From Kudoa neothunni (lineage: Eukaryota; Animalia; Cnidaria), in assembly GCA_964304625.1 (NCBI GenBank), contig OZ199840.1, positions 2,272,532 to 2,336,531 on the forward strand: 64,000 nt of DNA. The letters run 5' to 3'. The translations under genes were made by a program, and so were the position numbers. The number at the start of each line of letters is the position of its first letter. Position 1 is the stretch's first letter. Shown in pieces: positions 1,838 to 36,790 of this stretch. The notes under the pieces are model-generated. The model was given only the letters and a program-made list of their open reading frames with translations. It was not told the DNA's origin and did no database searches.

Positions 1838-2432
1838 TTTCTTATACTTCGAATCCTGTACACATGAACTAAAAAATTAAAAGGATTCGTTCAATTTTTC
1901 TATGAACTGAAAAATAATTCTGGCAATTTAATCGATTATTATGAAACTATACAGCATATTAATTACTTGATTAGGCAGGTTTTAAAAAAATTTTGCTGAA
2001 ATAAAAAAATGCTGGGGTCAAATCTGACCCCACTTAGGAACATACACTATTTTGTCGAGCACTGTTCCGTGAGGGTTAATAGGTGCAAATCTCCTAAACA
2101 TTTTTAAACTATTTCAGAGAAAATATTAAAAATAGAGCGTCATGTAGATTTATTTTATTTCTCTTGCTCATTTAAATTTTAAATGAACATTAGGCACGAA
2201 AGGATTAATAAATAGGAATTAAGAAGTGGCGCGCAAAATAAACGTTGCTTAAGCGCTTATATACTTTTAGATAAAAATAAATCTATGTTCAATATGAAAA
2301 AATACTAGTAGTTATCAACTATAATTATATTAATTTAAATATAATTTTCAAACAACTAATAACAAATTTGTTAACTAACTTTTATAATAATATAGGTAAT
2401 TGATGTAAGGGGTGGTGAAAGTATCATCGTTT

Positions 2433-5400
2433 TTATAGATCGTTAGAAATCTCCTTAGAATTCTTTCTGTAAACTGCTATACCTATCACTACCAAAAGTG
2501 AAACCACGATGGGTATCATTGCATATAATCTAAAAAAGATTATCTATAACAAATATGCATTTCCGTTACATGTAACTTCCAACAAACCTATCTAATGTCA
2601 AACTCGGAAATATAAATGTCAATTACGAATAACTATTCTTTGCAGCATCAAAATTGTGATTTTCTTTACTATCTACATTTTTCCTTATTTATCAGATCAT
2701 TAAATTAAAATAATTTTACTAAATATAATCATAAATATGACATGCAAAATCGTTTTTACCCGTTCTCAACCTTTTCTATTAATTTTTGAACGATATCATC
2801 TACTACAATGTCGGTATGCTCACTCCTTATGTTTTCTCCTCCTATGATTTTTTTATTCCACAAGGAATTTCTATTGAATTTACTAAATAAATCATTTTAA
2901 TTATATAGTAAATAGTTGGAATTTAGTTACCCTTTCATTTTACCTATTCTTGAGTCTTCGAAAAATATATTATTAGAAAATACGGATTAATTAATAGTTT
3001 AAACAAAATATATATACACCGAATACTATATTTGTTATAGAGTGAGTAATCCTTTGCTTTCAATTTCAATATATAATCCTTTTCCGTCGACAAGTTATTG
3101 ATGTTAACGATACATTTATTGGCAGAGCATTCTTCGTCATCATTACACCATGTAACAATTTCCCCCTCCTGGTTGTCTCCGATTTTTTCCTGAATCATAA
3201 ACGGACATCTTGAATTGTCATTTTTTCCTGTGAAATCTACTTTAATTGTCAAGTCACTACCTCCATTCAGCGAATGCTTAGTCGAAATAGCACCATTTAC
3301 TGAATAATATTATTAAAACATAAGCTTATTGATTTTGAATACTTGTCTCAACAGTATACTCCTTTTGTTTTTTGCCATCGGATGGTTCGACGGTCAAATC
3401 GTAAGTCGCTCCTAATTCTAGGTTGACAATTTTGAACTTAGCATCACATTTGTTCTCGCATTCTCCCATTTCATCACATGTAGCCATATATTTTGGATCT
3501 GACGTGCCATTTTTTTTAACATAAATTCTGCAGACCGGCAAATAATTATCAAATCCAAATGGTGTTATTGTAGCAGTGGAACCCTTTTTGTTTAATGGTG
3601 TATTATTTGTAGTTAAATCATTTCCCTCAGCTTAATAAACTGTTAGAATTTTTTTTAATTTTAGTCGTTACATGTTCGGAATGTTGCTTTCTTTACATAG
3701 TTATTAATTCCAATGTTGGTTACCGTTACAGAAATTATATAATTTGTACCAGCCGTAAGACCAGTAATAGAGTACATCTCGTCACAGCTAGTGCCGCATT
3801 CACCACTGTCATTACAATTAGCCCGTGCTTCAATCGAAAAAGTATTTGCTCGGCGTATTTTAATTGTACACATTGGGTCAGACATTCCTTTCTTCATACT
3901 CTTATACGCGTTAAGTCCGATAAGGGTGACACCCCTATCTTTAATATCGCTTAAATTTATGGCATTGTCATTTCCTATAACGCATTATTTTTAAAGATAA
4001 ATCCAAATTTACTTTTAAAGTATTGTTCGAACCCATCGATATCAAACCTTCGTTTTACAATTATTCCAATATTCTCACTTTCATCCGTTAAATTGATAAC
4101 ACTATCTTGACAAAGATGGAAACACTCTTTTTTCTCCTCAGTGCATCCATTCAGAACAGTACTTTGTTGAGTTGGGTTACTTTCACTTACCTTAAACACT
4201 TTGATGTGACAAATCTCGTCATTATATGGACCAGGAGAGAATTTTATTTGAAGTTTTCTATTGTTACTAGCATCGCCTGAAATTGAATAAATGATCTGAG
4301 ATTTTAGGGGGGTCTCAGTTTTCAAATAAGTATTATTTACGTAATAGAATATGGCAGGCCAAAGCAGTGTTGAACTGATATTATAATAACTTATGTATCT
4401 ATCAATTAAAAGAGCAGTGGATTTATCCTGTAAATTCTCAGAATACGATTCCATATTCAAGATGGCCTTTTTGGCACTGCTTTGTTCATCATCTTTTCCG
4501 TCATTTTGTATATTCCAATCAGTTATTGAGTTTGATTTGTAAGAGAAAATAACTTTTCCCTCATCATGAGAAAAGCCATAAGTGTTATCTTGTTTGAAAT
4601 CTATAAAAATATTATCATAAATATATATTTTTTTAATTACTCATTATTAATGGGAACACTTGCACCTTTTTACATCTTTTGGCTTCTACGTTGTCTGCGC
4701 CATAACAAACTGATATATATCGATCAACTTTTGAATTAATATATCCAACGTTTAGATCACTGTTGGTGCAGTCCACCAAACAATCATCATTATCTAAGTC
4801 TTCGCAAAGTTCTGGCTTTTTAAATTCGGTTCCTTCAAAATTAATTATCTTTATTACACACTTATTAGCATCAGGAAAACTGGACAGTTTTATTGAAAAT
4901 TTGTCAACTTTATCCGAAGATTGTATAAACTTCTGTTCAAGTTTTCCACGTCGAATGAAAGCTAAAAACGAATGTGAACAGAGATTCTTTTAAAAGTTAC
5001 CTGGTATTGATAACTTGAATGGTGCTGATTTTTTGTCTGCATATATCATCAATCTGTAGTTATACTTATTACTGTATGTATTATGTTCAAATTGAATATC
5101 GTTGCAATCTTTGACATCACCATTATCACAATCAATGCAGGATTTTATTATTCTTGTAGGTGAAACTATTTAACGATAATAAAAGTAATATGACACGATT
5201 ACCTTCGTTTTGGTCATGTTTATATAACTGATAGTAACATTTTGTATTGCTAACGTCTTCCAAAGATGATTTCATTTGTACGAGAAGCTTGTTCTTCTCG
5301 GAATTTGTTGAAACTTCAAAGTTGATTGTTGAACCGCCTAATGGTTATTTCTTCTATTATCGAATATATACATAACGATTGTTACTCTTATTTTGAGTTT

Positions 5401-8400
5401 CTAAAGTTTTTATTCCATAATTTCCACTGGGAACAATTTTGAGGGTATAAGTGGTATGGAAGTTAAGTCCAATAATGTCGAACCCTGATTTGCACGGCTT
5501 TACACACAACTCCTTTCCTGAACAAATGGCAGGATAATATAAATCACTTTTCTCTTTTATGTAGATGGTACAAATTATTGATTCATCTATTGTATTTTGG
5601 GGAACTGTGATTCCGTTCGGACTAGTAGTGATTGAAGACTCTTGAATGGGAAGTTGTTGGTTTGCTTGAGCAGAAAATATATTTAAAATACCGTCTAATT
5701 TTATAAAATACCTATTTTATGGAAAAAATATTTTCTTGGTGAGTAATTAGGTATTTTAGTTATAGTCACCATAATATCATTATGTAAATGATTTGGAGGA
5801 GGAGTAATTTGAACCTCCCCAAAGCTACAAGTAAATGATTGGTCATCTACATCTTTCCTTCCGTTTTCAGTAACTAATGGAGCATATGTGTTCCACATCT
5901 TTATTGAGCATGCAACAGATGGATTAGTTAATTCCTCACCATCTTCATTTTTATTTTTTCCAGTAAGATTAATTTGAATTTCTGTATCTGTTGTTTTCAC
6001 AGAAACATCAGGTAAGTGTTTCACTAAAAATTACAGGTGATTTACTGAATATATCTAAATCTTACGTATGTATATATTATTTTGATAACCGATAGTAGGT
6101 TTCATTCCTAGTTTTAGGACCCTTATTTTAACGGCTTTTACACTCGTGTGCATATTTCCAAATTTGTAGCTCTTGCACGTACTGAAAAAACAATTCTCCC
6201 TATTATCACATTCGTTCGAAAAAAAACCGTTCGAATTCGATGCTGTGGCGTCTATCCATTCAAATATGCACATTTCAGATGGCTCTGGATTAACCAGTTG
6301 AACTGTCAATGTTTCCTCTTGTTCATCATTTTTTAGTTCATAATAAAATCTATTGAAAATTGGGGCTTGGTTTTTAACAAATGTATTGTCGTAGAAATAA
6401 TGAAAATCAAAATATTCCGGACAGCTTATATAATAGTCTTTTATTAACTCGTCGAATTGAATCGAATAACTTCCAAAATCACATTGGGAGATTGTAGATT
6501 GTGTTTCCGTCACAGAATCTAGCACTTGGGTATCCTTATATGCTTTACATGATAATGAGCATTTATTCAAACCTAATTTTATTTTGTCGCCTTCTAATTC
6601 TGCTTTGTGAGTAAGTTCTTTGAAATGATCTTAAGAAATGATTAAATTAATAAAAAAATTATATAATACCTATGTAGTACGAATAGACCTTTCCTATATT
6701 AATAGTGACGCCTATGTCCGTTGGTTGTGGAGGTTTTTCAGGTTCATGTGATGCAAGAGAAGCTCCTTTCTCCATTTCTTCGTTTCCCATTCCTTTTGAA
6801 GATTGCTTTCCTCCATCGTCATTTCCTGGAGATGGCCTAAACTCACCTTCGCCCGATTTTGCAATGATACCTCTGTTAATACCTGATTTCCTCGTAGTTT
6901 TTACAGTTTTAGTTTCTGTATAAGTGACAGAAATGTAATTTGGTTTATTCTGACTATTAGGATCAATTTCGAATGCTGTTGAGAGTTCGGTGCATTTTTT
7001 TTTAATCATCCCGCTACTACCAACATTTTCATAACCCGAAAGGGCTACATTAGATTTTTGGATTGTGCATTCCGTATTCTGCTTACCTGTAAGATCAGTG
7101 TCTATGAATTTTACCATGTACTTTGATTCTGATTTATCGTAATATAGGACCATTTTTTCATTACCTTCTTCAATACCACCTATAAATATAAATTTAATAC
7201 TTCTATAAAAGAAAAAATACATTTTAAGCTTTGTTTTTGGGGGTTAGAGTAATCTACATTTATAACAACTAATGTATATGTGACTTCGCAGTTGAGAGAA
7301 TCCCATACGAAATCTATTGTCTTAGATCCACTAGTTACAGCAAGTTTACAACCGTCATTCAAACAATCCTTAATAATTTTCTTAGATTCTTGTTCCAGTA
7401 GAACGTATGCCCAAGAAGTTCTTAAAGTTTGATCTGAAGAAACAGCATCCAATGTAGCCGTTGTTTTCTTGTCCCCATCATCTGTTGAAACGTCTATTTT
7501 TATTTCGGTTCCAGCAGCTATTAAAATTCATTATTATTAGATTTCATAAATAAATTACTCGACACCGTACCGCCTTCAATACAGTTATATCCTTTAGGAC
7601 AAACAGTTATTTTGTATTCTGTTTTGGGATCAAGATTTATTATATTGAAATTTCCATTACAAGCACCAGAACAGAATTTTTTAGCATCACCTTCTCCACA
7701 TGTGGCGGGATACATCGGTGTATCATTTCCAACGGTTGAATAATACAGATCACATTTTTCCTGATTACCTGTTCCAGCAGAAAATAAATTGGATAAGTTA
7801 AGAGTTATTTTATTATATTGATCAGAAGGATTGGTCGAGGTAAGATCAGCAGTTTTTGTTAATTCATCTCCTATTTGTAATTATGAATACAGAGTAAATA
7901 TTTATCTTTACCTTTAGTTTTGAAATAAAAATAACGGTGATAATAATTAACTTCCGGCGAATCTAATGTGTTAAGTCCTTTTATTTTAACTTTTAAAATA
8001 TATTCGGTTAGTGGCATAAGCAAGCTCAAAATTATCGATTGAAAACCTCCGTTCCCATTATACGCGGGATTTCCCCAATTATCTTTAATTCCCAGATTTT
8101 TCTCAATTATTTTAATTTCTACGATAGCTGCTCCCTCTACAGCACTATCTTCTTCATTTTTATTTAAATTAGTTAACTCTAAAGATGCTTCATTCTTTCC
8201 AATGTCAGTAATAGTGGGTTGACTGGTACGGACTATAAAATTGATAAGAGACATTAGATAGATTACAGTTTACATGTGATAGTTTGAATAAACTCTTTGG
8301 ATATGATCTTGTCTAGGGGTTTTACAAGTACTTGAGCGAATTTCAAGGTTGGATTATGTTGATGATATAATGTCGCTTTGTAGCAAGGCTGAAGACAAGG

Positions 8401-9315
8401 CCCAGCTCTATTCATCTCTGAGCAATAAGAGGAAAAATGAGAGTCATTAATATCTTTTATTCCAAAGTAACAAATTTGCGAAGGTTTTGGATTCTGGAGG
8501 GTAATTGTGTAATAATTATCATTGGTTCCTTTTGACCCTGTTGCAATAAACCAATCCTCATCAAGATTTTTTGGATTCAATAAAATTTCTGGTGAGCGAT
8601 TGTCGATTCCAACCACATACGTAGGTTGATATGATTTAGAAGGTAATGTAATAGATTTGACTGAATAAAAGGCTTCCGACAATCCTTGGTTGTGTCCTGG
8701 AACCGAACCTTTGATTGTTATTTCGCTGTTTTGTTTACTTTGAATTGAAACAATGAATGTATTATTTATTTTAGTTGCTGTCAACGAGCTTTTTATGTAA
8801 AGATCTATTTTATGACATTAAAGTTTTAGAAAAAATGTTATTATACTTTTTGTAGTATAAACCCTCTTTATAGAGCATTTTTTAACATCACTCTCACTCA
8901 TTCCTTGACACCATTTAATATACTTAATGGTTTTAAAACCTTCGCCACTGAGGTTTAAACCAACTTTTCTACATTGGAAAATACACATTTTTGCATCCTC
9001 ATCCACTTTTGCACCACTTATGTCCGTATCGCAGGTAGAAACGGTGTTAATTATTTCCTTATTATAGCCATAATACTGGAGTGCACAGCGTTTGAAGCTA
9101 TTCTCAACATTGTATCCAGAGAGTGATATAATATATTTCTTTGGGCTGTGCGAAAAATTCACTTTCATTATGTTATTATCAATATTATCAGAAATCACAT
9201 TTTCCGCACATAACACTAATAACGATGAATATATATAATCTCAAAGAGAATTACGAGTGAAAATGACGAGATATATTGTAGAATCATATCGTTGTCTCAT
9301 AGACAATCTCATCAT
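2433..9315 (-). CDS. Multi-exon (about 22 exons) type I membrane protein with repeated four-Cys FN3-like modules; three tandem cassettes, about 1,900-2,000 aa
   Basis: Manual splicing gives an open frame from ATG at 9315 (MMRLSMRQRYDSTIYLVIFTLLCA|ENV, signal-peptide-like) across GT-AG introns of about 38-50 nt, all phase 1 between modules. FN3-type L-x-P-x-T-x-Y strands recur (LMPLTEYILKV, LDPKTEYKITV, LNFHTTYTLKI, LTAGTNYIISV, LELGATYDLTV, LSTEKDYILKL), mostly preceded by C..C..CxxxC. It ends with TM LYAMIPIVVSLLVVIGIAVY plus RKNSKEISNDL* (TAA at 2433-2435). Confidence 0.85.
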
Positions 9316-10289
9316 AATTAGCCTACTAGTTGTGAATTAACAAAAAATTCTTGGTTTAAATTTGTATCGATATGAATAGAGGAATTCATCTTGCTAATTA
9401 TTCGTACGTCCAATTCAATTAAAAAATTACCAACGTCGATCTTACGAAAATATAATAACTATTCATATGCGACAAAGTTTTATGTGAATAAACAATCCTC
9501 TTTTCGAGTATTATTGGTCGTTTCTGATGCCCCAACTATCACATACTTCGTTCACTCAAACAATTTTTATATAATATGCAGGAAATATTATTTTAATATT
9601 ATATTATAAATCGTATATAATTTTTGGTTAAAATTTCATATCACCGAAGTGCGATTAGTCAGAAGGCACGATAAAACAAATTTTCAATTGTATAATTGAT
9701 AAAATTACGCAAAAATTATTTTCACGATAAAATAAAATCCTAAAGTGCGTGTGTGCGTGCGCATTGGAACTTTTAATTCCAGAGACTTTACTCACAAATT
9801 ATATACAGATTTAATTTAATACTAGCGCTAATGTCCAGTGTCGCCTGGTACATTATGGTGGAAAATTTTAACTTTTAATTTTTTTTTGAATGGAGAAATT
9901 CTACGTTAAAGTTAATTTAATTGGCACGTTCAACCCTGTAAAGCAGTGTTCCCAACTTTTTTTCTAACGCGTCCCATCTTTTCTTCAAAAATAATTATTT
10001 CTAATTAAATTGTTTTACAACATTGGATCATGATTCCTATCACATTAAAAGTTGATGTTTTTAATAGAAAACATAAAATTATTAAAACTTAATAATGAGC
10101 ATTCAAACCAACAAATAATAATTTTACTGATAAACATTTTTTTGGGTCTTGTCATCTTTATTTGGGTGAAATTATTTTTTAATTTTGTGTTATCCGGGAA
10201 ATTACCAGGTTTTATACAACAAGTCTTTCATATTATTAAATATTTAAAATTCTTAATTGTGCATAACAAACAACAAGTAACATTATAAA

Positions 10290-11468
10290 AAAAATTCAAA
10301 GCAAATAAAAATACATATTGAGCGATATCCTGTGAAAATTATAGCTAAGGGGTCTGGAAGAAAAATAGATATCATATTTGATGAGCCTATTCCCGACACA
10401 ATTTGCAAATTTGAAATCGCCCAAAAGGGTGAAGCATTGACATCTAAATGTGGAAATGGTGAAAATACGTGTTATTAAGTATGTCAAAACGTCACAATGG
10501 AAACAAATTATAATAAAGACAATGACAAAGAATTCGATGTTAAAATATCCACTAGGGGCGTAGAATCCGAGAAAATGTTAATGTCAAGTATTTAACTATT
10601 ATTTTTACTATTTTATCTTATTTCATTAGCTGATAAAAAAGATTTCCCAATAACAATTATCCTTAAGTATGAGGCTACATTGGGAATCTCTATGCTTCAC
10701 GCGGCAAATACCGTATGCATGATGGAATTGTTTGTACAAGAGAACTACGTAAAAGTGGACCCAAATCGTGTGGGATTAAAATTGCATCCAGTTTTTGCTT
10801 CATGTGAAAACGATATAAAATTATTAAATCTTGAGGCTGATACCAAGTATATGGTTAGTGTACAACACAAAGCTTCGAGTGATGCAGCCGATACTGATGT
10901 GATACATATAAATAAAATTTTTAAAACAGGTATAAATATTTATCTTATAAACTTTAATAATTATAAAAAATAGCTAAAATTGATGATGTTACGACTGATG
11001 TTACAACATACCCTCATAACGTGATTATTCCACAAAAAATAGATCAGGAAGACTATAAAGCAGAATGTATGATAATGCAAGCATTGAAAGATACAACTAA
11101 TTTTATTCGATCGGTATGTGAAGAATCCTACAATTGCTACGGCTTGTGCACTTCGGAATTTACTGTCACTAGGCTGCAACCGGATATGGAATACACTTTC
11201 AAAGCAGTTCCACAGAGATTCTATCTGAAAACTGACGCTCCAACGAAAAATGTTAGAACAAGCATTAATGAAAAGTAAATTTCAAAGTTATATGAATCTT
11301 AGGGTCTCTATTTAAAAAGGTAGAACTTGGATAAAATCAGCCACAGGAATTGTACAACGCAGATATGATGGAGAGCCAGTTGAATTGGAACTCTTTATCA
11401 CAGGCCCGGCAGCTGTTACAGCTTCAACAACCGAAGCAACTGCTATCACTACGAGCACCCAAAAATAA
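10290..11468 (+). pseudogene. 5'-truncated pseudogene paralog of the Cys-FN3-like surface protein family
   Basis: Collinear with 12079-14338: IDIIFDEPIPDTICKFEI vs INIIFDEDMRDEICKFEI, NLEADTKYMVSV vs GLEPNTKYIVKV, RYDGEPV vs RYNSEPI. In-frame TAA at 10476-10478 (CY*VC vs CYQLC), no signal exon, internal deletion in the last module and no TM segment. Confidence 0.75.
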
Positions 11469-12078
11469 TTATTATAACATTATTAATTTTGGAATATCTT
11501 ACTTTTCAATGTGAATAAAATAGTAAACAAACTTTTATTTCGATAGTTAAAGTTGATATCTCATATTAATTCTTGTGTATTGTTTCCTTATTTTAACATA
11601 ATAACATATTATGTTGTTTAATTTTTCAATATATTTATGATAATTGTTATTGTTTTTACATATACAAATTTTTACGAAATTAAACTGTATTGATTGTAAA
11701 ATTGGTATAATTACATATAAACGAAAAATTATGAACACTTCTTTACAAAAAATTAATGAGTATATCCATTTGGTCTACCTATTAGTTAACTTAGAAGGGT
11801 TCTATTATGAACCTTCATAAAAAAAAATTAATTGACTTTTAAATGCAGTATTTTGTCTTAAACATGTTTATTTTAAATGAGTTTATCAATAAGAGACATA
11901 AGGATTTAGTTTCGGATGTAAATATTGTTTATTAGCTATCAATTCTATTGTTAAACTGCTATTCACTTGAAGAGTTCGTCCTTAATTTATTTTTCTCGTT
12001 TCTGTTGTCGCCTGAAATCATATTCGTTTGTATAATTCTTATTAAAAATTATAAATCTGTTATAATTAAGAACCAAAA

Positions 12079-14338
12079 ATGTTGATCATTACATTGTTGA
12101 TTTTCTCTTTCAGCTATAATAGTATAATTTGAGGGTTATCGAGTTTTTGCTATTAGATTTTTTTAGTCCAGTCACATAAATACTACGTTGAACGAGATCA
12201 AGCCACGTTAGAAGATAAAATCCATTTACAACTTGAAGGAGTATCTGGAATTAAATGTGACATTAAATTGCTGGAAAAAAATGAACTTTTCTATCACTAT
12301 ATTAACGGTGAATCTGAAAGCGAAACACTTTCAAGACGTCTCTTGTGCGGGAAAATACACCATTTCTACTGGAGCTGCTTTTCCTTCCTATTATATACAG
12401 ATAAAATCAAAATATGCAACCGAAACTCTTAAAATAGTTCATAGTATTAGAGTTATTAGAGATTATGAATAATTTTTTCAATAGTTACTGATCAAACTCC
12501 TGAAACTCATTTTACAATTAATGCAACCGCCATCAAATTTACAACTAAAAATGTCTGCAGTCATCCTCAAACTTGCAGACTAACCAGCGGAGATAAAGTT
12601 CTCGATCAGTTTACGCCAACTCCCAACACCGAATGCAATGAGGAAAGTCACCTTACTGGTTTCTTCGACTCAGCCGGCGACTCAATCGAACTCTCCTGTG
12701 GAGTCAACCAACCGAAAATACACATGAATAGAAAAAACAACAAGTTGATGGAATTAAGTCCATTGGACCGACTTCCTTATCACATTTCTAAAAACGGTAA
12801 CGATAAAATAAATATTATTTTCGACGAAGATATGAGAGATGAAATATGCAAATTTGAAATTAAAAAGAAATCGGAACAAAATTATCAATCAAAATGTTCT
12901 GTTAATCAAAATGAGAATAATTGTTATCAACTCTGTACTGACGCTGTAATGAACTTTGATTCGCTTCAAAACTCAGACAAAGATTTTAAAGTTAGAGTAT
13001 CCACTAGAAATCATGTAGGAACAGAAAAAACTTTAAGAAGTAATTAATTTTATGCAATAATTGTAATTTAAATATTAAATAGTTGGAAAGGGTGACCTAC
13101 GAGTAGCACCAAAAGAAACTAATGCGACTCTTTCTATTGCAAATCTTAAAGGTGATGACTTGACTGACCCAAAATGTGCAATTGAGTTGAGAAAGCAGGT
13201 ATTCCCTAAGGTCCCCGTTGATGTCAAATGCAGTGCTAATCTGGAAACAGCATGCCCTACTGATTGTACTGATGCCACTATTCATGGCCTCGAACCAAAC
13301 ACAAAATACATTGTTAAGGTAACTTATACTCAAACCAGTAGCGGTGCCACATCATATACCGCGGAAAAGCTTTTTAAAACAGGTAAAAAATAAAAAATTA
13401 TTTATATAAAATTATTTTAAGCTGACTACAATATTACACAAAAGCCTGAGATTAAAACATACTATGAGCACGTAATGATGACTGTAGCACCAAACGAAGC
13501 TCTTTTTGATGGAGTATACTGCAAAATTCAACAAAAAATGGAGGGTGCGATTGCTTTTAGTCCTTCGGAATGTGAAGAATCAGTTGATTGTTCGGGTTTA
13601 TGTGGACAACCACTTACCATTAAAAATCTTTTGCCCGATACCAAATACGAGTTCAAATATTTATTTGGCAAATACGTTAGTGACCTTGAAACAAACATTG
13701 TGGCAGTATCAACAAGTAATGTGAAGTAGGATTCCTCAATAACATTTATTAAGCTGACACGCTTCAAAATATTAATGTTACCCATACATGGAATAATACC
13801 GATTTGATTGTGACAACTACCGTGGCCGAAATGGATCCAGACCAAATATGTGATTTTACCTTTGCTGAAATAGTAAATGGGGCGATCAAATACACCTATG
13901 GATTATTTGATAAAACAACTGGATGGGAGGGAAAATGCAACCAAGAAATAACTTTTTACAATGCAGCTTCCTACAAACAAGGCTCAATGAGGGTACAGGC
14001 AAGGTACAATAGTGAGCCGATCGTAGTGAGTCTTTGGAGTGGAACGAATATGGAGAATGATGACCCCACATCACAAGAAACTGCTAAACAAGGTAAATTA
14101 TATTAACAAATTATGTATTATAATTCTTTTTAGGAACTTCAAATAGGTAATATGGTTATCTCTTTAATTATTTAATCTATTTTTAATTTTGATCTAGCGC
14201 TAATGTCGGCGGATCGAAGATTATGTAATATTTTCTGGTGTCATTCGGTTCTAATGATAATTTAGGTTGATTGTTGGTGGAGTTTTAATAGCATTATTGG
14301 TATGTGCTATCGGTTTCTTGGTCTTAACAAAGAAATAA
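12079..14338 (+). CDS. Single-cassette Cys-FN3-like type I membrane protein (about 630 aa) with one apparent frameshift near 12270-12340
   Basis: Signal MLIITLLIFSFSYNIQS, then five module exons joined by phase-1 introns (CAIEL..C..CPTDC..IHGLEPNTKYIVKV; CKIQQ..CEESVDCSGLC..IKNLLPDTKYEF). A 13-nt micro-exon lies at 14134-14146, followed by TM LIVGGVLIALLVCAIGFLVL-TKK*. Confidence 0.8.
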
Positions 14339-17300
14339 ATGAGTCCCTAATTTTCGATTTTACAAAAACATGAATCCAATTTTTAATAAAAATCGTTTAT
14401 TATAAGATCTACTTTTATATGAGCATTTGATAAATCTGATTTTTTACAGAAAAATTTTTAAACGCTAATAATTAACTTTAGAATGTTCTTTTATTATACC
14501 TTTTCCACATGAATACATTAAACAAGATAAATGACAACATAATCCTTAATAAATAATTTAACTCTTTTAAAAGAATTAGCGTATTTAAATGGATAACTAC
14601 GTTTAGAATTATTAAATTAAGAATAAATTAATTTTTTCCATGAAATCTTTAAAACCAAAAATTCTAAAAAAGTAATAAAAATACCTCAATAAATACACGT
14701 GAACCAATCTTTTAGTAGTTTATAATATTAAATAAAGAGCTACTATTAAATATTAAGTATATATAACCACAAATTTATGGTAAATGTCCCTTTTTATCGT
14801 ATTAATAGGAAAAAATATAAACAACAATAATTGAAGTTTGGTGCGTATGCGCCTAATATAATGAGGTGATAATACATTTCGTATTTTGTTTTGGTAAATA
14901 TTTGTGTTTACTCAACATTGATATTATTTTTATATTATAATTTATGGCGGGAATGGATACGTTTGAATTAAAATTAACAATGCTTTTATAGTAATTTTGT
15001 AAATTTCTAGTCTCTTAAATATATTAATAATTCTCTTATGGTTATTTCAAATTAGTCTAAATCTTCTTGGATGTTTTGTGTGGTTAGTTTATATTTTTAT
15101 CCTATATCATATATTTATTTGTGTGTTTCATTTAAATAGTGACTGTAATTTATTCATATTGAAATATAATATGTATAAAATAGTACTTAAAATTCAACTT
15201 GTTAATTTTTAATAATTTTCCAGTAATTAATTGATATAATTTCCATTATCCTACTTTTTATTCTACTAAATATTTCCCTTAAAAATAAATAGATATTATT
15301 CTCCTCATTCGTCATCTTATGAACTTATTATTATTTTTAATTTATAACAGCGCATTGATAATATGCTCACCTTAAAAATAATATTACAAGGAAATTGATT
15401 CAGAATTGATAAATTAAAGGATTTGTCTTCTAGAGCTTCCATATAAAATTAAAGATTGTATCTCTCTATAATCAAATTCATATTGAGAAAAAATAAAGAT
15501 AAATTATATTCTCATGAGATTTAAAACTTTAAGCACAATATTTGATTATGATTTTTACTGTAAAAATACTCTATATTTTTTATGAACAAATTGAATCCCT
15601 ATTCAGTATAAATTCTTTATCTAAATATTCTAAAAATTTTCATAACAATTTCAATGGAAGAGGATAAGAATCAAAATTATGTTTGATACGCACATGCGTG
15701 TATGTGCATAATTATATGATAATGTTTTATATATCAATTTTTGATGTACTCTTTTAAAAATCGATTCTATAGTAATTGATTAATTACTGAGGTCAAAATT
15801 AGTTCCGATTACCCTCTGAACACATTATTCTAGAACTCCATCAAAATTAGTCTCAAATGATAAAAATTAATGTAAAATTTTTTAATATAATATATAAAAA
15901 TATAATCCATATTCAATCGAGATAATTAAAATAATTAAATACTTTTATTTTCAATCTCCAAACATGAATTGGAATGTATGATTATGCAACCAATGTCTGT
16001 GAATAATCCCTAGAAATATTTTATTTCTCTGAGATTATAAACTAAAATAATGAAATATGACTTTTTATTGTATATATTGAAGTTTTTATACAATATATTT
16101 TGAAATAATAGCTAATTACTACGAAAGAATATAGTACTTTAAAGACTGATTGATTTAAACATATTTAAAATCTCTAAGTTTTCAATAACAGAAAATTTTA
16201 CATTTTTATTTTACGTTAGAATTTAATAAAAAAACTTAGATTAAGGGTTTGAACTTAATAATCCTTAAAAAATAGGGAATGATACGATTTTAATACTCTT
16301 ATTGTGAAAACGTTTACGATAATTTTAAGTAGAAACTTCGAGATTATAATTTATTATAATATTAAGGTTAGCGGAGTTTAAATATTGCGAACAAATTTTT
16401 CACTTAATTCGGAGGATGCATTAATCTATTTTACGATTATTTAATTCAAATTTATATTTTATAATTTTTACCTTTTTATATAAAATAAAGAATCTCATAT
16501 TGTTGATTAATCCAAATGTAATTTTTTAATAAGCATGAAATTAATGGAAAATCAAAAATATTTTTTTTCATTTTTGGACTCCAACGGCCCTTTCAGAACA
16601 AATTGTTCAACATATAGATGACGAAATATTTTATAACAATACAATATTAATATTAGGCGTATAAAAATATTAAACGATGTTAACTGGTCAAAAACGGACC
16701 CAAATTTACTATTTTGTTTCTACATTTATGTATTTTTAGTTATTTACTTTGAAAATTATCAAGTTCCTGTATTAGGTGCGTTTCTATGTGTGAATATAGT
16801 TTATAATTTATCGGCTAAGGATTTATGCATAGAATAAGACACAGTTTTCAAATTTCATTTCATATTTGTTGTACTATTTTCTAAACCTCATATATTTATT
16901 ACAATTATGATTTTCTCTCATCAAAATCAAAATTTTTGATCCAAACAACACCGCGAACCGTGAAAAACAATTTTTTTAATATAATCCACAATAGATTAAC
17001 GATAATTAATCCGATTAATTATTCCGTTTGTTTTCGCTTTCGCCTGGGGGGATAACAATATTACTTATAAATTTTTTGCATTTCCTGGATTTTAATATGA
17101 TTCCTAACAACAATTTAATTATTGGTATAAGAGTTGTAACCAATGTCAACTAATGCACGATCAACAACACAGCGGTATGGCGCCACCGCTTTTTAAACTA
17201 TGGCCCACAGGGTTTAACCCCGTCCGCAACCACTCATTGCATCTGTCTTAAGATAAATTTCATAATGAAATATTATATGCCATTTAGTATCATAGAATAT

Positions 17301-23843: not shown

Positions 23844-26800
23844 TTACAGTACAACGATCAAGCATCCAAACAGCGAGAGTAAAACAATCAATAAAATCTC
23901 TTAAATATATTTACAAACAAAATTTGATCAATTGATTACTTTCTTTTGTTTTGTTTAATGGTTTGACTTGAGCACCTGACTCTCTATTATTTAAAATTAT
24001 TTATAAAACAAAAATTATATATATAAATTATAACAATTTATTTTGTATTTAAGCTGTCAATAATTGTTTTCAAAGTTATAAATACGTTTTTTTATCTTTT
24101 TCACTCTCATATTCATTTTGTTCGGTTGTTCCATCTTTATTGTTATCAGTCTCTGTTGCCTTGGTGGTTTCATACGTATTTTCTTTTGGAATATCAGATG
24201 TTTCTCTATCAGTTTGTTCATTAATAGTTTCTTTTGGAGCGTGTGTAGTTTCTTTTGGAGCGTGTGTAGTTTCTTTTGGAGCGTGTGTAGTTTCTTTTGG
24301 AGCGTGTGTAGTTTCTTTTGGAGCGTGTGTAGTTTCTTTTGGAGCGTGTGTAGTTTCTTTTGGAGCGTGTGTAGTTTCTTTTGGAGCGTGTGTAGTTTCT
24401 TTTGGAGCGTGTGTAGTTTCTTTTGGAGCGTGTGTAGTTTCTTTTGGAGCGTGTGTAGTTTCTTTTGGAGCGTGTGTAGTTTCTTTTGGAGCGTGTGTAG
24501 TTTCTTGTGAAGCGTGTGTAGTTTCTTTTGGAGCGTGTGTAGTTTCTTTTGGAGCGTGTGTAGTTTCTTTTGGAGCGTGTGTAGTTTCTTTTGGAGCGTG
24601 TGTAGTTTCTTGTGAAGCGTGTGTAGTTTCTTTTGGAGCGTGTGTAGTTTCTTTTGGAGCGTGTGTAGTTTCTTTTGGAGCGTGTGTAGTTTCTTTTGGA
24701 GCGTGTGTAGTTTCTTTTGGAGCGTGTGTAGTTTCTTTTGGAGCGTGTGTAGTTTCTTTTGGAGCGTGTGTAGTTTCTTTTGGAGCGTGTGTAGTTTCTT
24801 TTGGAGCGTGTGTAGTTTCTTTTGGAGCGTGTGTAGTTTCTTTTGGAGCGTGTGTAGTTTCTTTTGGAGCGTGTGTAGTTTCTTTTGGAGCGTGTGTAGT
24901 TTCTTTTGGAGCGTGTGTAGTTTCTTTTGAAGCGTGTGTAGTTTCTTTTGGAGCGTGTGTAGTTTCTTGTGAAGCGTGTGTAGTTTCTTGTGAAGCGTGT
25001 GTAGTTTCTTTTGGAGCGTGTGTAGTTTCTTTTGGAGCGTGTGTAGTTTCTTTTGGAGCGTGTGTAGTTTCTTGTGAAGCGTGTGTAGTTTCTTTTGGAG
25101 CGTGTGTAGTTTCTTTTGGAGCGTGTGTAGTTTCTTTTGGAGCGTGTGTAGTTTCTTTTGGAGCGTGTGTAGTTTCTTGTGAAGCGTGTGTAGTTTCTTT
25201 TGGAGCGTGTGTAGTTTCTTTTGGAGCGTGTGTAGTTTCTTTTGGAGCGTGTGTAGTTTCTTTTGGAGCGTGTGTAGTTTCTTTTGGAGCGTGTGTAGTT
25301 TCTTTTGGAGCGTGTGTAGTTTCTTTTGGAGCGTGTGTAGTTTCTTTTGGAGCGTGTGTAGTTTCTTTTGGAGCGTGTGTAGTTTCTTTTGGAGCGTGTG
25401 TAGTTTCTTTTGGAGCGTGTGTAGTTTCTTTTGGAGCGTGTGTAGTTTCTTTTGGAGCGTGTGTAGTTTCTTTTGGAGCGTGTGTAGTTTCTTTTGAAGC
25501 GTGTGTAGTTTCTTTTGGAGCGTGTGTAGTTTCTTGTGAAGCGTGTGTAGTTTCTTGTGAAGCGTGTGTAGTTTCTTTTGGAGCGTGTGTAGTTTCTTTT
25601 GGAGCGTGTGTAGTTTCTTTTGGAGCGTGTGTAGTTTCTTTTGGAGCGTGTGTAGTTTCTTTTGGAGCGTGTGTAGTTTCTTTTGGAGCGTGTGTAGTTT
25701 CTTTTGAAGCGTGTGTAGTTTCTTTTGAAGCGTGTGTAGTTTCTTTTGGAGCGTGTGTAGTTTCTTTTGGAGCGTGTGTAGTTTCTTTTGGAGCGTGTGT
25801 AGTTTCTTTTGGAGCGTGTGTAGTTTCTTTTGGAGCGTGTGTAGTTTCTTTTGGAGCGTGTGTAGTTTCTTTTGGAGCGTGTGTAGTTTCTTTTGGAGCG
25901 TGTGTAGTTTCTTTTGGAGCGTGTGTAGTTTCTTTTGGAGCGTGTGTAGTTTCTTTTGGAGCGTGTGTAGTTTCTTTTGGAGCGTGTGTAGTTTCTTTTG
26001 GAGCGTGTGTAGTTTCTTTTGGAGCGTGTGTAGTTTCTTTTGGAGCGTGTGTAGTTTCTTTTGGAGCGTGTGTAGTTTCTTTTGGAGCGTATGTAGTTTC
26101 TTTTGGAGCGTGTGTAGTTTCTTTTGGAGCGTGTGTAGTTTCTTTTGAAGCGTATGTAGTCTCCTCATGTTGAGGTTTAGTCGTCGTGTCAAGAGAGTTT
26201 GGTAGTTTGTTTTCGTCGTTGGGATCTATTGGATTACTTTTTGGTTGTTCTGGGGTTAGTTCACCGAAAATTCCGAGATTTTCTGGTCTAGAAAAAATTA
26301 ATCCAGTCGATAAAATAATATTACATTTTATAGGTTGAACACTTCCCTTCCTTGTTACAATACTAGAGGAGGTGAATTTAGAATTTTTAATATAATTTCA
26401 TTAATACTTGGTTGTATGAACATGAGACGTCCTTACAAAGACTAAAATCCTTGTATTCACTCTCACATTTTCCCATCACACACACCTATATTTATTTACT
26501 CCTTGTTTTGAAGTTATATTACTATTCCTTCTGGACAATGAATATTTTCACATGTCAAGCGATTCTTCTGTGCGTTAATGCACCTATTATTAAGACACAT
26601 CTAAATCATTTTCAATGAGTAAAATTCATAACACAAATACACTGTTTTCAGAGCATTTATGCCCATTAGGGACAAAACCCAAGAAATTATCAGACTCTGT
26701 GGGTATCACAAATCTATCATTATTATAAATATATCTCAAATACGAAAACAATTACGGGCATAATCCATCAGATGTACTCAGTTTGTAATATGTTCCAAAA

Positions 26801-28604
26801 ATAATTGCGTCTGGTGGCGCAAAACAGTTTAATAAACCACAGTAAGAAATACTAATAGTAATTAATATAAATTAAAATTCCTTGTGATATGATAACACAT
26901 TTTCACATCTTTTATCGTAATTAACTTTACCTATGACAGAATTTATGTATTAATACTGAATTATTGTCTTACTCGAATTGTGTAACTGATGACATTGTTG
27001 ATTAGCATTAGGACACTTACCATCGACACAATAAGCCTTACATATTATTAATACAATCCCAGTCATCAAGTTAATTTACCAATCCAGAATTACATGGTGT
27101 TCCATCTGGTTTGATATTAGAGGATGGACACTATAATTAATTCAAATATAAATTTCAATAAACAATAATTTTTATTTTAATTACAAATGGACTTTTTCCG
27201 TTACAAGTTTCCTGCATGTGACACTGATCACCTTTTCGGCATACGTTCCCTTTCTTGAGCTGTTTAGTAGTTAAAATGGTTACACCATAACTAATAACGT
27301 ATGAAAGGTTAATAGTTGTCTACCTGACAAGAAGAACAACACTCTCCTTTAGAACATTGAGCATGAGATTTAAGTTTACATGTACTCATATCGCAACATT
27401 CATTTTCTCCGCTTATTATACAATTTGCTTCAAACCCGCAGTCACATTCTTCACCGGGATCCACCATCCCATTGCCGCATACATGAAATGTTTCAAAATT
27501 AACATTTTTCTAATTAGCAACAATAAAAATCATTAAATTATTAATTATATACCAACAAGAAATCATTTTTATGATAATTGTCAAAGTGTTTTTTTATATA
27601 ATCAAAACCTTTCACACTAAATCCGGGAGGATATGGGATATTATCTGGCCTAGATTATTAAATAAATGAATAATACTATTAGCAATAATATACCATCCAC
27701 TTGAACTTGGCCTCATAAGGCATCTCAGATTTATATCAAAACATTTGCTGCCTTGAGATGGAAATTCAAACACAAATATTCTAATAAATAAGATACTCCC
27801 GTGAGGAATGTGAGGCGATCCAAATAAATGGCCTAATTCGTGAGAAAATGTTACGTGATCAATCCATCTATTTAACGGTTCTTGTATTGAAATCTTTTAT
27901 ATATTGATAAAAATAAAATATTTAAATTTATACTTGAACTACAGCTGAACCGAAAACAGGATTATGGTTAAAATTAAAATTCGCTATACCTGACGGTCCC
28001 CCTCCCTCATAAAAATATCGGTAACTAGAATAAATTATTATAATAATTATATTTTTTGTTACATAAACAATATGTGATATCCACTTCGTATAGATGTAGT
28101 TTTGAGAAACTTTCGAAATTCAATCCCCATAATAGTTAAAATGGATTTGGGCTCTTGAAAATTGCTACCTTTAAATGACTTCACAACTAGTTTAATGTTA
28201 TGCCAAGCATAGGTCTATAATAATTTTATAGAAACAATTTTCATTAAGGACGTTACAGTCATTGACTTTATGACGACATCTCTCATATATGCGGGTTCTT
28301 TTAAATCAAGCTTCATCTAAAACAGATTAAACTACGATGTAAAATTTGTATACTGTGCTTTTGGCTTTGTGGATATGAATGTGGGCGTATTTTGTTTTTT
28401 CCATACGCTTAAGATAGTTTTGATCTCTCCACAACTATTTAATTATCATCATCATTTAATAAAACTAAATTTTTACTTCGGTGGCACAAATTCCATATCT
28501 TATAATAACTATTTTAAAGTTTTATAATTGTGAACTGATAATTGATATTTACCACTTAATACAAGAAATACAAGTAAAACCTTTGGCATATTAACTTTGC
28601 TCAT
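23844..28604 (-). CDS. ADAM/reprolysin (M12B) metalloprotease-disintegrin lacking a prodomain, with mucin stalk and GPI-type C-terminus
   Basis: Spliced translation gives: signal [26 protein letters not shown]; zinc motif [11 protein letters not shown] (27810-27842); Met-turn CLMRP; disintegrin [50 protein letters not shown]; Cys-rich domain (PDGTPC, YCVDGKC, CGLLNC, VPNGHKC); ETTHAPK repeat exon; terminal [21 protein letters not shown]. The start could be 28604 or 28589. Confidence 0.9.
24225..26161 (-). repeat. Coding minisatellite, 21-nt unit x about 92, encoding ETTHAPK (variants [21 protein letters not shown])
   Basis: The unit GAAACTACACACGCTCCAAAA is in frame with the ADAM exon (..[40 protein letters not shown]). 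This frame is missing from the ORF track because it has no start codon. Confidence 0.95.
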
Positions 28605-34879: not shown

Positions 34880-36790
34880 GTATACGAGATAGAACTTATT
34901 TATAATTGGATGTAGTATCCGGTTCATCATAGCCTGGAATGTGGGTGGCGCATTGCACAACCCGGATGGCATTCTATTGGATCAGAATAAACCGAACGGT
35001 GTAATGAATGCTATCTTCCATCTTGATGTTTTTTTACTTCAATCCGATGGGATCCTGAAGATAGGTCGAATTTCGAGAATATTGCGGAGCCTCCCAGTCT
35101 ATCAAAATCTTCATCTATTCTAGGTAATGGATAACTATTTTTGATTGTTATATTGTTCAGTCTTCTGTAGTCGATGCAAAGTCTATATTCTACTGTTTTC
35201 TCATTGACTAAGATAACGTTGGATGCCCAGGGGTTCTCCGATGGTTCTAATATTCCCTCGGACAACATTTTATGCATTTGTTTTTCAATTTCGTCGCAAT
35301 GTGAAAAGGTTGCGTCTTAGGAATCCTTCATTCGCTGGAAGCGTATTTATGAAAATTTCAAATTTGTGTTGAGTTCCAGTTGCTTTCTTCAACGGGCCAG
35401 TTTTGTCGTACATCAAATCTGAGAATTCTTCCAGAATATTCCTGATTGTGACCACAAATGGTTTATTTGTTATCTTCGTGCGAAGAACATCTGGCAAACG
35501 TTCGCTGGTTCTAATTCCTTTGTTTCCAGTATCAATAATAATTCCAAATTTTATTAGTAGGTCTAATGCGATTATTAATTCACGACCAGAGACGTTTGGA
35601 ATGAGGAATTCGCATATTTGTATAATATTATTGTAGCAAACTTCTATGCTTGTCGTAAAACTCACAACCGACTTGTATCCTCCCACCAAAAGACTGGTTA
35701 TCTTTGAGATTTTGGGGACGCACTTTGGACGTGTTCTTGCAACGTCCATTGCGATAGAGGATCTACCTGATCCCGTATCGACAAGACCTGTAACCTCAAT
35801 GTCGTTTAACTTGAGGCGAATGGTTAATGAATTGCCGCGCCGAAAAGGTAACCACAAACATAGGAACGTCTGCTAAATTCTGAAATGATGAACTTGTTAT
35901 TTTTAAACCGTTAGGAGAATCTTTTCGCAAAATGTCCAGATTTTCCACACAGGTAGCATACACCGGAGTCATCGCAACTATGAATTTTCGCCTTGTTGAG
36001 CTCTGCCATCATTCCAGGATCGAAAAGTTGTTTTTGTACTGCAGATCTATCCAACTTTTGGGCTACCAGTAGGGCATTTTTGATATCATTCATCTTTGTG
36101 ATCAGTAGGTGGTTTCAAATTTAGATGTGGATAGCCTTGACAAATTGGTTGCATAAGATTCTTCGCAATAAGACCTCCTTTGAACCTTCAAAAGCCAACT
36201 TACTCAGACTTGTAAACCTATCGCAGAATGATTTATGTCTTCTCCATCGTTCTGGAACATTCTAGTTGTAACAGGTAGGAAAGATTTATTGCAACTATAA
36301 TAATCAATCTTTTTTACCTTGAAGTCGTCGAAATCGCTATAATTGTTTATCCCATTGCTAATCATCCTTCCGTATACGACATCAGACAGCATGGGCGAGG
36401 AAGTATCTAACCCAATTCGACTTGTTCATTATTATCAATTTAAATCATCATTCCACTCTTCCAACCATGTGAGCCACTTTCGAGGTTCCATCATACAGAT
36501 CGATCCTAAATAACTCCCCAGTTGTGGGAGTCACAATTTTGCACACAACAAAACACTCGATAAATATGGCAACATTTGCTAATCCGCGTAATGATTATTT
36601 ATGCTCATCGAGGAATATCAGGTAACATCGAGATGACGTCATCGCTTCGCAATTTCTATCATTCATGCTGATGATCTTCCTCGTGCCTAACATAAAGATA
36701 TTCTCATTCGTCTGGCAGAGTATAAACTCCTCAGACGAATCGTTATCAATTTCAGATCTCACACGATTGGATCTAAAATGTTACCTTTCA
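34880..36790 (-). mobile_element. Truncated Ty3/Gypsy retrotransposon (gag-protease-RT fragment)
   Basis: Zinc knuckle CYLCGKSGHFAKR, protease LVDTGS, RT WASNVILV..YRLCIDYRRLN..YPLPRID..FSKFDLSSG and PFGLCNAPPTFQ. Frameshifted and cut at the Helitron at 34869. Confidence 0.9.

What the first reader, a model, noticed from the sequence alone, without database searches (positions are those of the whole stretch)
2433..14338. Candidate new surface-protein family built from four-Cys FN3-like modules, with three paralogs in one divergent cluster
Seen: three homologous genes share a module of about 95 aa, C-x-I-x-I..C..C-x3-C..(I)x(N/G)LxPxTxY, and the module exons are bounded by phase-1 introns. Both near-intact members have a signal peptide, a TM helix and only 3-11 cytoplasmic residues. 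Established: LxPxTxY is the FN3 E-F strand signature, canonical FN3 domains lack such a Cys set, and phase 1-1 exons typify shuffled extracellular modules. Inference: a rapidly diverging, non-signalling adhesin, coat or decoy family, functionally analogous to the SRS and 6-Cys families of apicomplexans. I do not recognise it as a named family.
Basis: partly seen in the sequence, partly recalled or inferred. Interest (0 to 1): 0.82.

Follow-up and report, generated by a model that had tools for sequence, protein, structure and literature searches.

The report
Disulfide-stapled FN3 surface-protein family in Kudoa
A fish-muscle parasite (the myxozoan Kudoa neothunni, a tiny relative of jellyfish) carries a large, undescribed family of membrane-anchored surface proteins made of strings of cysteine-stapled fibronectin-III-like domains, and this locus holds one intact giant member, one dead copy and one frameshifted copy.

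Summary
Window 2433-14338 carries three related genes built from ~95-100-aa modules with the pattern C-x-I-x-I..C..C-x3-C..L-x-P-x-T-x-Y. Nearly every module is one exon flanked by 37-48-nt phase-1 introns.

- **Fold:** AlphaFold and Foldseek place the module in the FN3 fold (TM about 0.7). Pfam fn3 stays below threshold.
- **Gene A (9315-2433, minus strand):** one intact 19-exon gene of about 1,935 aa. It has a signal peptide, three copies of a cap / double-domain / three-module unit, a TM helix and an 11-aa tail.
- **psiB (10285-11465):** a true pseudogene.
- **Gene C (12079-14338):** the short form, with TM plus TKK, but with a +1 frameshift in exon 2.

The genome matches the published Kudoa neothunni assembly. 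The module occurs at 54 or more loci on all three chromosomes. Outside this genome I found only two fragmentary relatives among 1.84 billion proteins, and no literature.

Copies are under purifying selection on the framework (dN/dS 0.01-0.4). They carry hypervariable loop patches and short mosaic tracts. Expression could not be tested.

The scan found this superfamily before on other DNA of the same genome (s1-687395). The surface-protein reading is well supported. A host-facing or antigenic role is inferred only.

The parts
2433..9315 (-). Gene A: intact 19-exon gene, about 1,935 aa. Signal peptide, three repeated ectodomain units, TM helix, 11-aa tail.
   Evidence: An unbroken chain of open exons is joined by 37-48-nt phase-1 GT..AG introns. 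Summed exon length is 5,808 nt, divisible by 3. All 16 tested exons are also open in the 80%-identical paralog C1:373-383 kb.
9255..9315 (-). Exon E0 of gene A: start codon and signal peptide (MMRLSMRQRYDSTIYLVIFT).
   Evidence: Sequence read; translation. A 39-nt phase-1 intron (9216-9254) follows.
6670..9215 (-). Unit 1 of gene A (E1 cap, E2 double-domain exon, E3-E6 modules). E6 ends in a low-complexity, stalk-like stretch.
   Evidence: Exon map. E1 resembles E12, and E2 resembles E7, E13 and c3, by blastp. Cys-poor modules E3 and E5 are seen.
5001..6629 (-). Unit 2 of gene A (E7 double-domain exon, E8, E9, and E10+E11, one module split by an extra intron).
   Evidence: The E6/E7 and E11/E12 junctions are 40- and 39-nt introns with no room for a promoter, signal peptide or TM exon. 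The E9-to-TM exon order is the same in a contig of another species (L031).
3027..4961 (-). Unit 3 of gene A (E12 cap, E13 double-domain exon, and the four-Cys modules E14, E15, E16).
   Evidence: The AlphaFold model of E14 (3673-3972) has pLDDT 82.5 and an FN3 fold.
2433..2841 (-). Tentative exon E17 (2760-2841) and last exon E18 (2433-2529): TM helix plus RKNSKEISNDL and the stop codon.
   Evidence: Candidate splice sites; translation. The phases (1 then 2) keep the frame. No RNA support.
10285..11465 (+). psiB: pseudogene of a short B-type member.
   Evidence: In-frame TAA at 10476-10478 where intact copies read CYQ(I/V)C. Homology to intact copies stops at 10285, so the 5' exons are missing. 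Exon b4 has lost about 65 codons.
12079..14338 (+). Gene C: short C-type member. Exons: SP 12079-12121, c2 12167-12443, c3 12485-13039, c4 13083-13382, c5 13422-13715, c6 13754-14092, tentative 13-nt micro-exon 14134-14146, and TM exon 14266-14338 ending in TKK.
   Evidence: The AlphaFold model of c3 shows two tandem beta-sandwiches whose best PDB matches are tandem FN3 pairs.
12329..12331 (+). +1 frameshift in exon c2 of gene C (TTT versus TT in three paralogs). It leads to a stop at 12430-12432.
   Evidence: Nucleotide alignment with L038, L040 and L041. I could not check whether this is a real mutation or an assembly error.
12752..13351 (+). Hypervariable, mosaic patches in the distal modules of gene C: 12752-12811, 12872-12991, 13052-13171 and 13292-13351.
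   Evidence: These patches are 22-38% diverged from the copy at C1:17.10 Mb, whose background divergence is 0-3%. In several patches the window copy is 85-100% identical to other paralogs instead. Patch 12880-12919 is variable in all 15 copies (mean divergence 0.42).

Best explanation
These are members of a lineage-specific superfamily of type I single-pass membrane proteins of the myxozoan Kudoa neothunni.

**Architecture.**
- The ectodomain is a rod of tandem FN3-fold beta-sandwich modules.
- Most modules are stapled by two disulfides, inferred to pair C1-C4 and C2-C3.
- Most modules are encoded by their own phase 1-1 exon.
- A short stalk, one TM helix and a 3-11-residue tail follow, so the protein cannot signal by itself.

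**How the family grows.**
- Block duplication: the B+C gene pair exists in at least four places.
- Tandem arrays.
- Internal triplication of the whole ectodomain unit (gene A).

**How copies diverge.** They keep the framework under purifying selection. They differ in loop patches of the membrane-distal modules, partly through short-tract exchange between paralogs.

**Most likely role (inferred, not shown).** A variable coat or adhesion layer on the parasite surface that faces the fish host.

**State of this locus.** It holds one intact long gene, one pseudogene and one frameshifted short gene.
For: **Shown:**
- FN3 fold: pLDDT 82.5; Foldseek PDB and ESM-Atlas hits are all FN3, TM 0.6-0.72. The double-domain exon folds as tandem beta-sandwiches.
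- Signal peptides, TM helices and short tails.
- 17 N-x-S/T sequons and 62 Cys in 1,840 ectodomain residues.
- Sixteen phase-1 introns of 37-48 nt.
- All 150 scored module matches have E <= 1.7e-9, out of 964 first-look candidates, at 54 or more loci on three chromosomes.
- About 58 full-length homologs of exon E13, most of them open.
- All 15 C-type copies are open across c3-c5.
- dN/dS is 0.18-0.40 overall, 0.01-0.2 in the framework and 0.5-0.65 in loops.
- Mosaic patches.
- Block duplication of B+C.
- Unit correspondences E1=E12, E2=E7=E13=c3, E14=c4=b2 and E4=E9=E15=c5=b3.
- Genome statistics match the K. neothunni assembly in PMC12239612: 40.2 Mb, N50 12.0 Mb, three chromosomes plus a mitochondrial genome, GC 30.4%, median intron 49 nt.

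**Inferred:**
- Disulfide pairing, from co-loss of cysteines: 69 CCCC, 5 CxxC, one CxCC, one CCxC and no other two-Cys pattern among the HMM hits. Module E5 is xCCx.
- Surface location and the host-facing role.
Against: - There is no expression evidence of any kind. Three RNA runs gave zero reads on 2401-8400, which the tool itself calls no test.
- No block of 15 codons reaches dN/dS > 1, so positive selection is not shown.
- No near-identical donor was found for the divergent patches; the best is 80-81% over 260 nt. Gene conversion therefore rests on 40-nt tracts only.
- Two of the three copies here are damaged.
- Disulfide geometry could not be measured, because model coordinates are not exposed.
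Confidence: 0.7

Rival explanations
1. The same proteins serve the parasite's own cell-cell adhesion or spore construction (valve, capsulogenic and sporoplasm cells, plasmodium integrity). They would not be a host-facing variable coat. In animals, FN3 rods with short tails are typical homophilic or matrix adhesion parts.
For: The fold and architecture fit adhesion molecules in general. The best tandem-domain matches include sDscam and titin FN3 pairs. The framework is under purifying selection.
Against: Housekeeping adhesion rarely needs 54 or more loci with hypervariable loops and mosaic exchange. Many copies lie in arrays near chromosome ends (C1:0.34-0.51 Mb and C1:17.10 Mb of 17.15 Mb), as contingency families often do.
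Confidence: 0.2
2. The cluster is mostly genomic debris: a decaying repeat family with no present function.
For: psiB is dead. Gene C has a frameshift. Several E13-type copies carry stops. No RNA was seen.
Against: Gene A and its paralog are open across all 16 tested exons (about 1,840 codons) with dN/dS 0.40. All 15 C-type copies are open across c3-c5, with framework dN/dS 0.01-0.2. The exon order is kept in a contig of another species at 30-53% amino-acid identity.
Confidence: 0.06
3. The genes are diverged orthologs of a known conserved FN3 receptor family (class I cytokine receptors, Dscam/RPTP-type receptors).
For: Foldseek lists cytokine-receptor FN3 pairs among the matches to the double-domain exon. 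Those receptors also carry four Cys in one FN3 domain.
Against: TM scores for those pairs are 0.26-0.53, which is fold-level similarity only. There is no WSxWS motif. The tails are 3-11 aa with no kinase-docking or phosphatase domain. Pfam finds no hit. The profile search returned only generic FN3 E-F-strand matches.
Confidence: 0.02

Closest known systems
Canonical fibronectin type III domain (Pfam PF00041, FN3 fold)
   Same: Seven-strand beta-sandwich of about 95 aa. L-x-P-x-T-x-Y tyrosine-corner motif in the E-F region. Tandem arrays in extracellular proteins. Phase 1-1 exons. TM 0.6-0.72 to tenascin and fibronectin FN3.
   Different: Four conserved Cys (C-x-I-x-I in strand C, one in the C' region, and C-x3-C before strand E). 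No strand-B Trp. Pfam scores of 12.6-18.6 bits are below the 25-bit cut-off and cover only the E-F part.
Class I cytokine-receptor homology module (FN3 pair with four Cys and WSxWS)
   Same: An FN3 tandem pair with two disulfides in one domain. These pairs are among the structural matches to exon c3.
   Different: Those receptors pair consecutive cysteines, whereas nested C1-C4/C2-C3 pairing is inferred here. No WSxWS, no Box motifs, and a tail of 3-11 aa.
Apicomplexan 6-Cys (s48/45) and SRS surface families
   Same: Functional analogy only: parasite multigene families of membrane-anchored, disulfide-stapled beta-sandwich modules in tandem, with no signalling tail.
   Different: A different fold family (the SRS/6-Cys fold, not FN3). 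They are GPI-anchored rather than TM-anchored. There is no sequence or Pfam match, and the host lineage is unrelated (protists versus a cnidarian).
Giardia-type VSPs and the VSP-like genes reported in the myxozoan Sphaerospora molnari (bioRxiv 10.64898/2026.02.11.705288)
   Same: A candidate variable surface family in a myxozoan. Type I membrane proteins with a very short tail.
   Different: VSPs are CXXC-rich (5-10% Cys or more) and are not FN3. Here Cys is 3.4% and there is a single CxxC in all exons.
The FN3-like membrane protein family found earlier by this scan at C3:2.79 Mb (s1-687395)
   Same: The same superfamily. My module HMM hits that locus at E 1.7e-14 to 2.5e-14 with the same four-Cys pattern.
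   Different: A different subfamily. The genes here are the long triplicated A type and the short B and C types, and they were not among the top 150 matches near that locus.

Membership tests
FN3 fold / Pfam PF00041 | Seven-strand beta-sandwich with FN3 topology | tested here: met
   AlphaFold2 model of 3673-3972 with 30 aligned modules: pLDDT 82.5. Top PDB hits are monobodies, tenascin and fibronectin FN3, TM 0.6-0.7. Atlas hits are 89-100% fn3, TM 0.66-0.72, rmsd 2.3-3.0 A.
FN3 fold / Pfam PF00041 | Score above the Pfam gathering threshold (25 bits) | tested here: not met
   Scores of 16.3, 18.6 and 12.6 bits for three modules, matched only over profile positions 44-74. The other 17 exon translations gave no fn3 hit.
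FN3 fold / Pfam PF00041 | E-F tyrosine-corner motif L-x-P-x-T-x-Y | tested here: met
   L72 and Y78 are at least 90% conserved. The consensus is I-x-N-L-x-P-x-T-x-Y.
FN3 fold / Pfam PF00041 | Conserved Trp in strand B | tested here: not met
   No conserved W in the 30-sequence consensus. There are zero W residues in E4, E9, E14, E15, c4 and c5.
Class I cytokine receptor homology module | WSxWS motif and a cytoplasmic Box1/2 region | tested here: not met
   A regular-expression search finds no WS.WS. The tails are 11 and 3 residues.
Apicomplexan 6-Cys / SRS | Match to the s48/45 or SRS domain models, and the SRS-type fold | tested here: not met
   No such Pfam hit at E <= 1 or 0.1. The fold is FN3.
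Giardia-type VSP | Many CXXC motifs and Cys content of 5-10% or more | tested here: not met
   One CxxC in all exons. 62 Cys in 1,840 aa, which is 3.4%.
Variant surface antigen system (functional class) | Large paralogous family of surface proteins | tested here: met
   At least 54 loci, with 964 first-look candidates. About 58 E13-type exons. 15 open C-type copies. The surface location itself is inferred from the signal peptide and TM helix.
Variant surface antigen system (functional class) | Hypervariable regions on a conserved framework, with segmental exchange between copies | tested here: inconclusive
   Patches are 22-38% diverged against a 0-3% background, and the nearest neighbour switches between paralogs. 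However, dN/dS stays below 1, and no near-identical donor was found.
Variant surface antigen system (functional class) | Mutually exclusive or switching expression | not testable with these tools
   No RNA reads of the organism were available. PMC12239612 also reports that very few transcriptomic reads map to K. neothunni.

The most novel reading that the evidence does not exclude
A cnidarian (metazoan) parasite has independently evolved a protozoan-style variant surface antigen repertoire on an FN3 scaffold. The repertoire would be hundreds of disulfide-stapled FN3 rod proteins. Their monobody-like loops (the BC, C-C' and FG regions of the distal modules) would be diversified by short-tract gene conversion among paralogs. 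One or a few would be expressed at a time, to evade or engage the fish immune system.
Probability: 0.18. Interest if true: 0.85.

Novelty: new variant of a known kind. Interest (0 to 1): 0.6.

Why it matters
Myxozoans are economically important fish parasites, and Kudoa spoils tuna and flatfish muscle. Almost nothing is known about how they meet the host surface or avoid immunity.

A family of 54 or more loci, probably well over 100 genes, would be a large share of a proteome annotated at only 5,316 genes. That annotation relied on protein hints from other species (PMC12239612). It may therefore have missed much of a lineage-specific family; this is my inference.

The family offers three things:
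- Candidate antigens, diagnostics and adhesion molecules.
- A natural example of disulfide-stapled FN3 scaffolds with variable loops.
- A clean case of exon-unit triplication through phase 1-1 exons.

It is not unique to this window. The scan already met the superfamily elsewhere in this genome.

Tried and rejected
**Expression.** I laid three metatranscriptomic raw-read runs and one DNA run on 2401-8400. There were no RNA reads at all, and only unspliced DNA contigs. This is no test.

**Word-index protein searches.** A search with module E14, and another with a 26-sequence alignment that included the two outside relatives, both came back blank. The second did not recover even P0078. I therefore treat both as uninformative, not as evidence of absence.

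**Organism identity.**
- An exact look-up of the genome's intronless actin found nothing in the collection.
- Rfam on the fourth contig gave nothing. Its ORFs need TGA=Trp, which fits a mitochondrial genome.
I dropped all four.

**Donor searches.** Searches for the divergent patches of the window copy and of its closest duplicate found no copy better than 80-81% identical.

**Literature and accessions.** Searches on Myxozoa or Kudoa with fibronectin, FN3 or multigene surface families gave nothing relevant. A search for the accession numbers of the two outside contigs gave nothing.

**Two or three genes in 2433-9315?** I rejected this. The unit junctions are 39-40-nt introns. There is no internal start, signal peptide or TM exon. 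The same order is kept in a paralog and in another species.

The full-length fold and full-length homology search were therefore not done.
Full report
**Observation.** Stop-to-stop translation of 2000-15000 shows a run of open exon-sized frames. On the minus strand they run from 9240 to 2436. On the plus strand they run from 10281 to 14338. Aligned exon by exon, they share a module of 95-100 aa: C-x-I-x-I, a second Cys about 18 residues on, C-x3-C, then I-x-x-L-x-P-x-T-x-Y. With 20 paralogous modules from elsewhere in the genome added, two Cys are invariant. The other two Cys, L72 and Y78 are at least 90% conserved. Pfam gives only sub-threshold fn3 matches (12.6-18.6 bits against a 25-bit cut-off), restricted to the E-F strand region. 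Most exons give nothing at all.

**Gene models.** On the minus strand every pair of neighbouring open frames can be joined by exactly one short GT..AG intron of 37-48 nt in phase 1. The first coding exon starts at ATG 9315 and encodes MMRLSMRQRYDSTIYLVIFT, followed by a 39-nt phase-1 intron. The last exon (2529-2433) encodes a TM helix and the 11-residue tail RKNSKEISNDL. One small penultimate exon (2841-2760) is tentative. Together these give 19 exons and 5,808 coding bases, or about 1,935 aa.

I examined whether this is one gene or several. It is one gene, for four reasons:
- The junctions between the repeated units (E6/E7 and E11/E12) are 40- and 39-nt introns.
- There is no internal start codon, signal peptide or TM exon.
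- All 16 tested exons, spanning the three units, are also open in an 80%-identical paralog on chromosome 1.
- The exon order E9 to TM is kept in a 3.1-kb contig of a different species, at 30-53% amino-acid identity.

Exon-against-exon blastp gives these correspondences: E1=E12, E2=E7=E13=c3, E14=c4=b2 and E4=E9=E15=c5=b3. The long gene is therefore roughly a threefold repeat of the ectodomain of the short gene, as another first-stage note (s1-687471) also proposed.

On the plus strand there are two genes.
- **Gene C** runs from ATG 12079 (signal peptide MLIITLLIFSFSYN) through five module exons and a tentative 13-nt micro-exon. It ends in a TM exon with TKK and a stop at 14336-14338. It carries one extra T at 12329-12331 relative to three paralogs. 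That shifts the frame in exon c2. I could not tell a real mutation from an assembly error.
- **psiB (10285-11465)** is dead. It has TAA at 10476-10478 where intact copies read CYQ(I/V)C. Its homology to intact copies stops at 10285. One exon has lost about 65 codons. Its closest duplicate shares the stop.

**Fold.** An AlphaFold2 model of module E14 with 30 aligned modules has mean pLDDT 82.5 and seven strands. Foldseek against the PDB returns only FN3 domains (monobodies, tenascin, fibronectin, sDscam), with TM 0.6-0.7. The ESM-Atlas shape search returns fn3 clusters at TM 0.66-0.72 and rmsd 2.3-3.0 A. The 184-aa exon c3 folds as two tandem beta-sandwiches (pLDDT 73). Its best matches are tandem FN3 pairs. 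The whole ectodomain is therefore a rod of FN3-like domains.

The canonical strand-B Trp is absent. Among HMM-detected modules, 69 have all four Cys and 5 have only the first and last. One has lost only C2 and one only C3, and no other pattern occurs. Module E5 has only the middle two. This co-loss pattern argues for C1-C4 and C2-C3 disulfides.

**Organism.** The assembly has 40,260,978 bases in chromosomes of 17.15, 12.04 and 11.05 Mb, plus an 18.2-kb contig whose ORFs need TGA=Trp. Its actin is of the animal type. An earlier follow-up note (s1-687395) named Kudoa neothunni. I checked this against PMC12239612. That paper reports 40.2 Mb, N50 12.0 Mb, three chromosomes plus a circular mitochondrial genome, genomic GC 30.41%, median intron 49 nt and 5,316 predicted proteins, assembled from yellowfin tuna data. 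The match is close enough to accept.

**Family size and spread.** All 150 scored module matches in the genome (of 964 first-look candidates) have E <= 1.7e-9. They fall in at least 54 loci on all three chromosomes. These include arrays at C1:0.34-0.51 Mb, C2:8.0-8.2 Mb and C1:17.10 Mb, the last 48 kb from the chromosome end. Exon E13 alone has about 58 full-length homologs, most of them open. The psiB+C pair is duplicated as a block at C1:17.10 Mb (91-97% identity), C3:8.14 Mb and C1:2.78 Mb. My module HMM also hits the locus studied in s1-687395, at E 1.7e-14 to 2.5e-14 and with the same Cys pattern. It is one superfamily, already met by this scan.

**Relatives elsewhere.** A profile search of 1.84 billion representatives gave 1,893 hits. 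The top 150 are generic multi-FN3 proteins matched only over the E-F region. The exceptions are P0068 (a Logan contig) and P0078 (an ENA metagenome contig), which have the four-Cys pattern and are colinear with gene A. Two word-index searches were blank and are uninformative. I found no paper describing an FN3 family in Myxozoa. The recent Sphaerospora molnari preprint describes other surface families, namely VSP-, RIFIN/STEVOR- and ETRAMP-like genes.

**Evolutionary pattern.**
- Gene A against its paralog: dN/dS 0.40, range 0.13-0.82 by exon.
- Gene C against three copies: dN/dS 0.18-0.38.
- Across 15 C-type copies, all open in c3-c5: framework blocks have dN/dS 0.01-0.2 and loop blocks 0.5-0.65. 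No block exceeds 1.

Against its recent duplicate (background divergence 0-3%), gene C shows four patches that are 22-38% diverged. In several of these patches the window copy is 85-100% identical to other paralogs over 40 nt. This fits short-tract exchange. However, no near-identical donor for a whole patch exists in the assembly. The patch at 12880-12919, in the stretch between C1 and C3, is variable in every copy.

**Interpretation.**
- Shown: type I membrane topology, an FN3 rod, a conserved Cys set, a large family, purifying selection on the framework, and variable, mosaic loops.
- Inferred: the disulfide pairing, surface exposure and a host-facing coat or adhesion role.
- Not tested: transcription. 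The RNA runs held no reads of this organism on this stretch.

Noticed in passing
window 23844-28604 (minus strand): A long ORF at 24079-26397 is a mucin-like array of KETTHAP heptads. Downstream of it on the minus strand, the ORF at 27615-27896 carries [11 protein letters not shown], a zinc-metalloprotease (reprolysin/ADAM-type) HExxHxxGxxH motif.
   Followed up: no
window 40807-41181 (+) and 59765-60139 (-): Two nearly identical 125-aa open frames (NEVAIAMSDEQHCTRDIVLRS...) lie in inverted orientation about 19 kb apart. Similar flanking ORFs sit at 39909-40241 and 60648-60956. This is probably two copies of one transposable element.
   Followed up: no
window 35014-35872 (-), 43848-46089 (+), 56367-58775 (-): Retrotransposon protease/RT-like and integrase-like open frames, and helicase-like fragments that may be of Helitron/Pif1 type. 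I judged these by eye from the translations only. This part of the window is repeat-rich, in line with the 45% repeat content reported for the genome.
   Followed up: no
window 50001-53872 (-): A very long open frame (693 aa, plus further exons downstream to about 50001) of a coiled-coil-like, Lys/Glu-rich protein.
   Followed up: no
G000 contig C4 (L037, first 10 kb of 18,219): GC is 43%, much higher than the nuclear 30%. Long ORFs appear only if TGA is read as Trp, and there is no Rfam match at gathering thresholds. This fits the divergent Kudoa mitochondrial genomes described in PMC4492933.
   Followed up: partly
L031 (Logan SRR33849685 contig, 3,139 nt, GC 27.7%) and L032 (ENA ERZ28624939 scaffold, 734 nt, GC 32.7%): Two contigs from other samples carry colinear pieces of an A-type gene. 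L031 covers E9 to TM at 30-53% amino-acid identity. L032 covers E3-E5 at 41-70%. They probably come from other Kudoa species. I could not find the sample origins.
   Followed up: partly
gene A versus L039, and gene C versus L040/L041: Synonymous divergence (dS 0.42-0.49) exceeds intron and flank divergence (0.14-0.27) in the same alignments. This could reflect constraint on the tiny introns, poor fit of the distance correction at this AT-rich composition, or exon-biased exchange.
   Followed up: no
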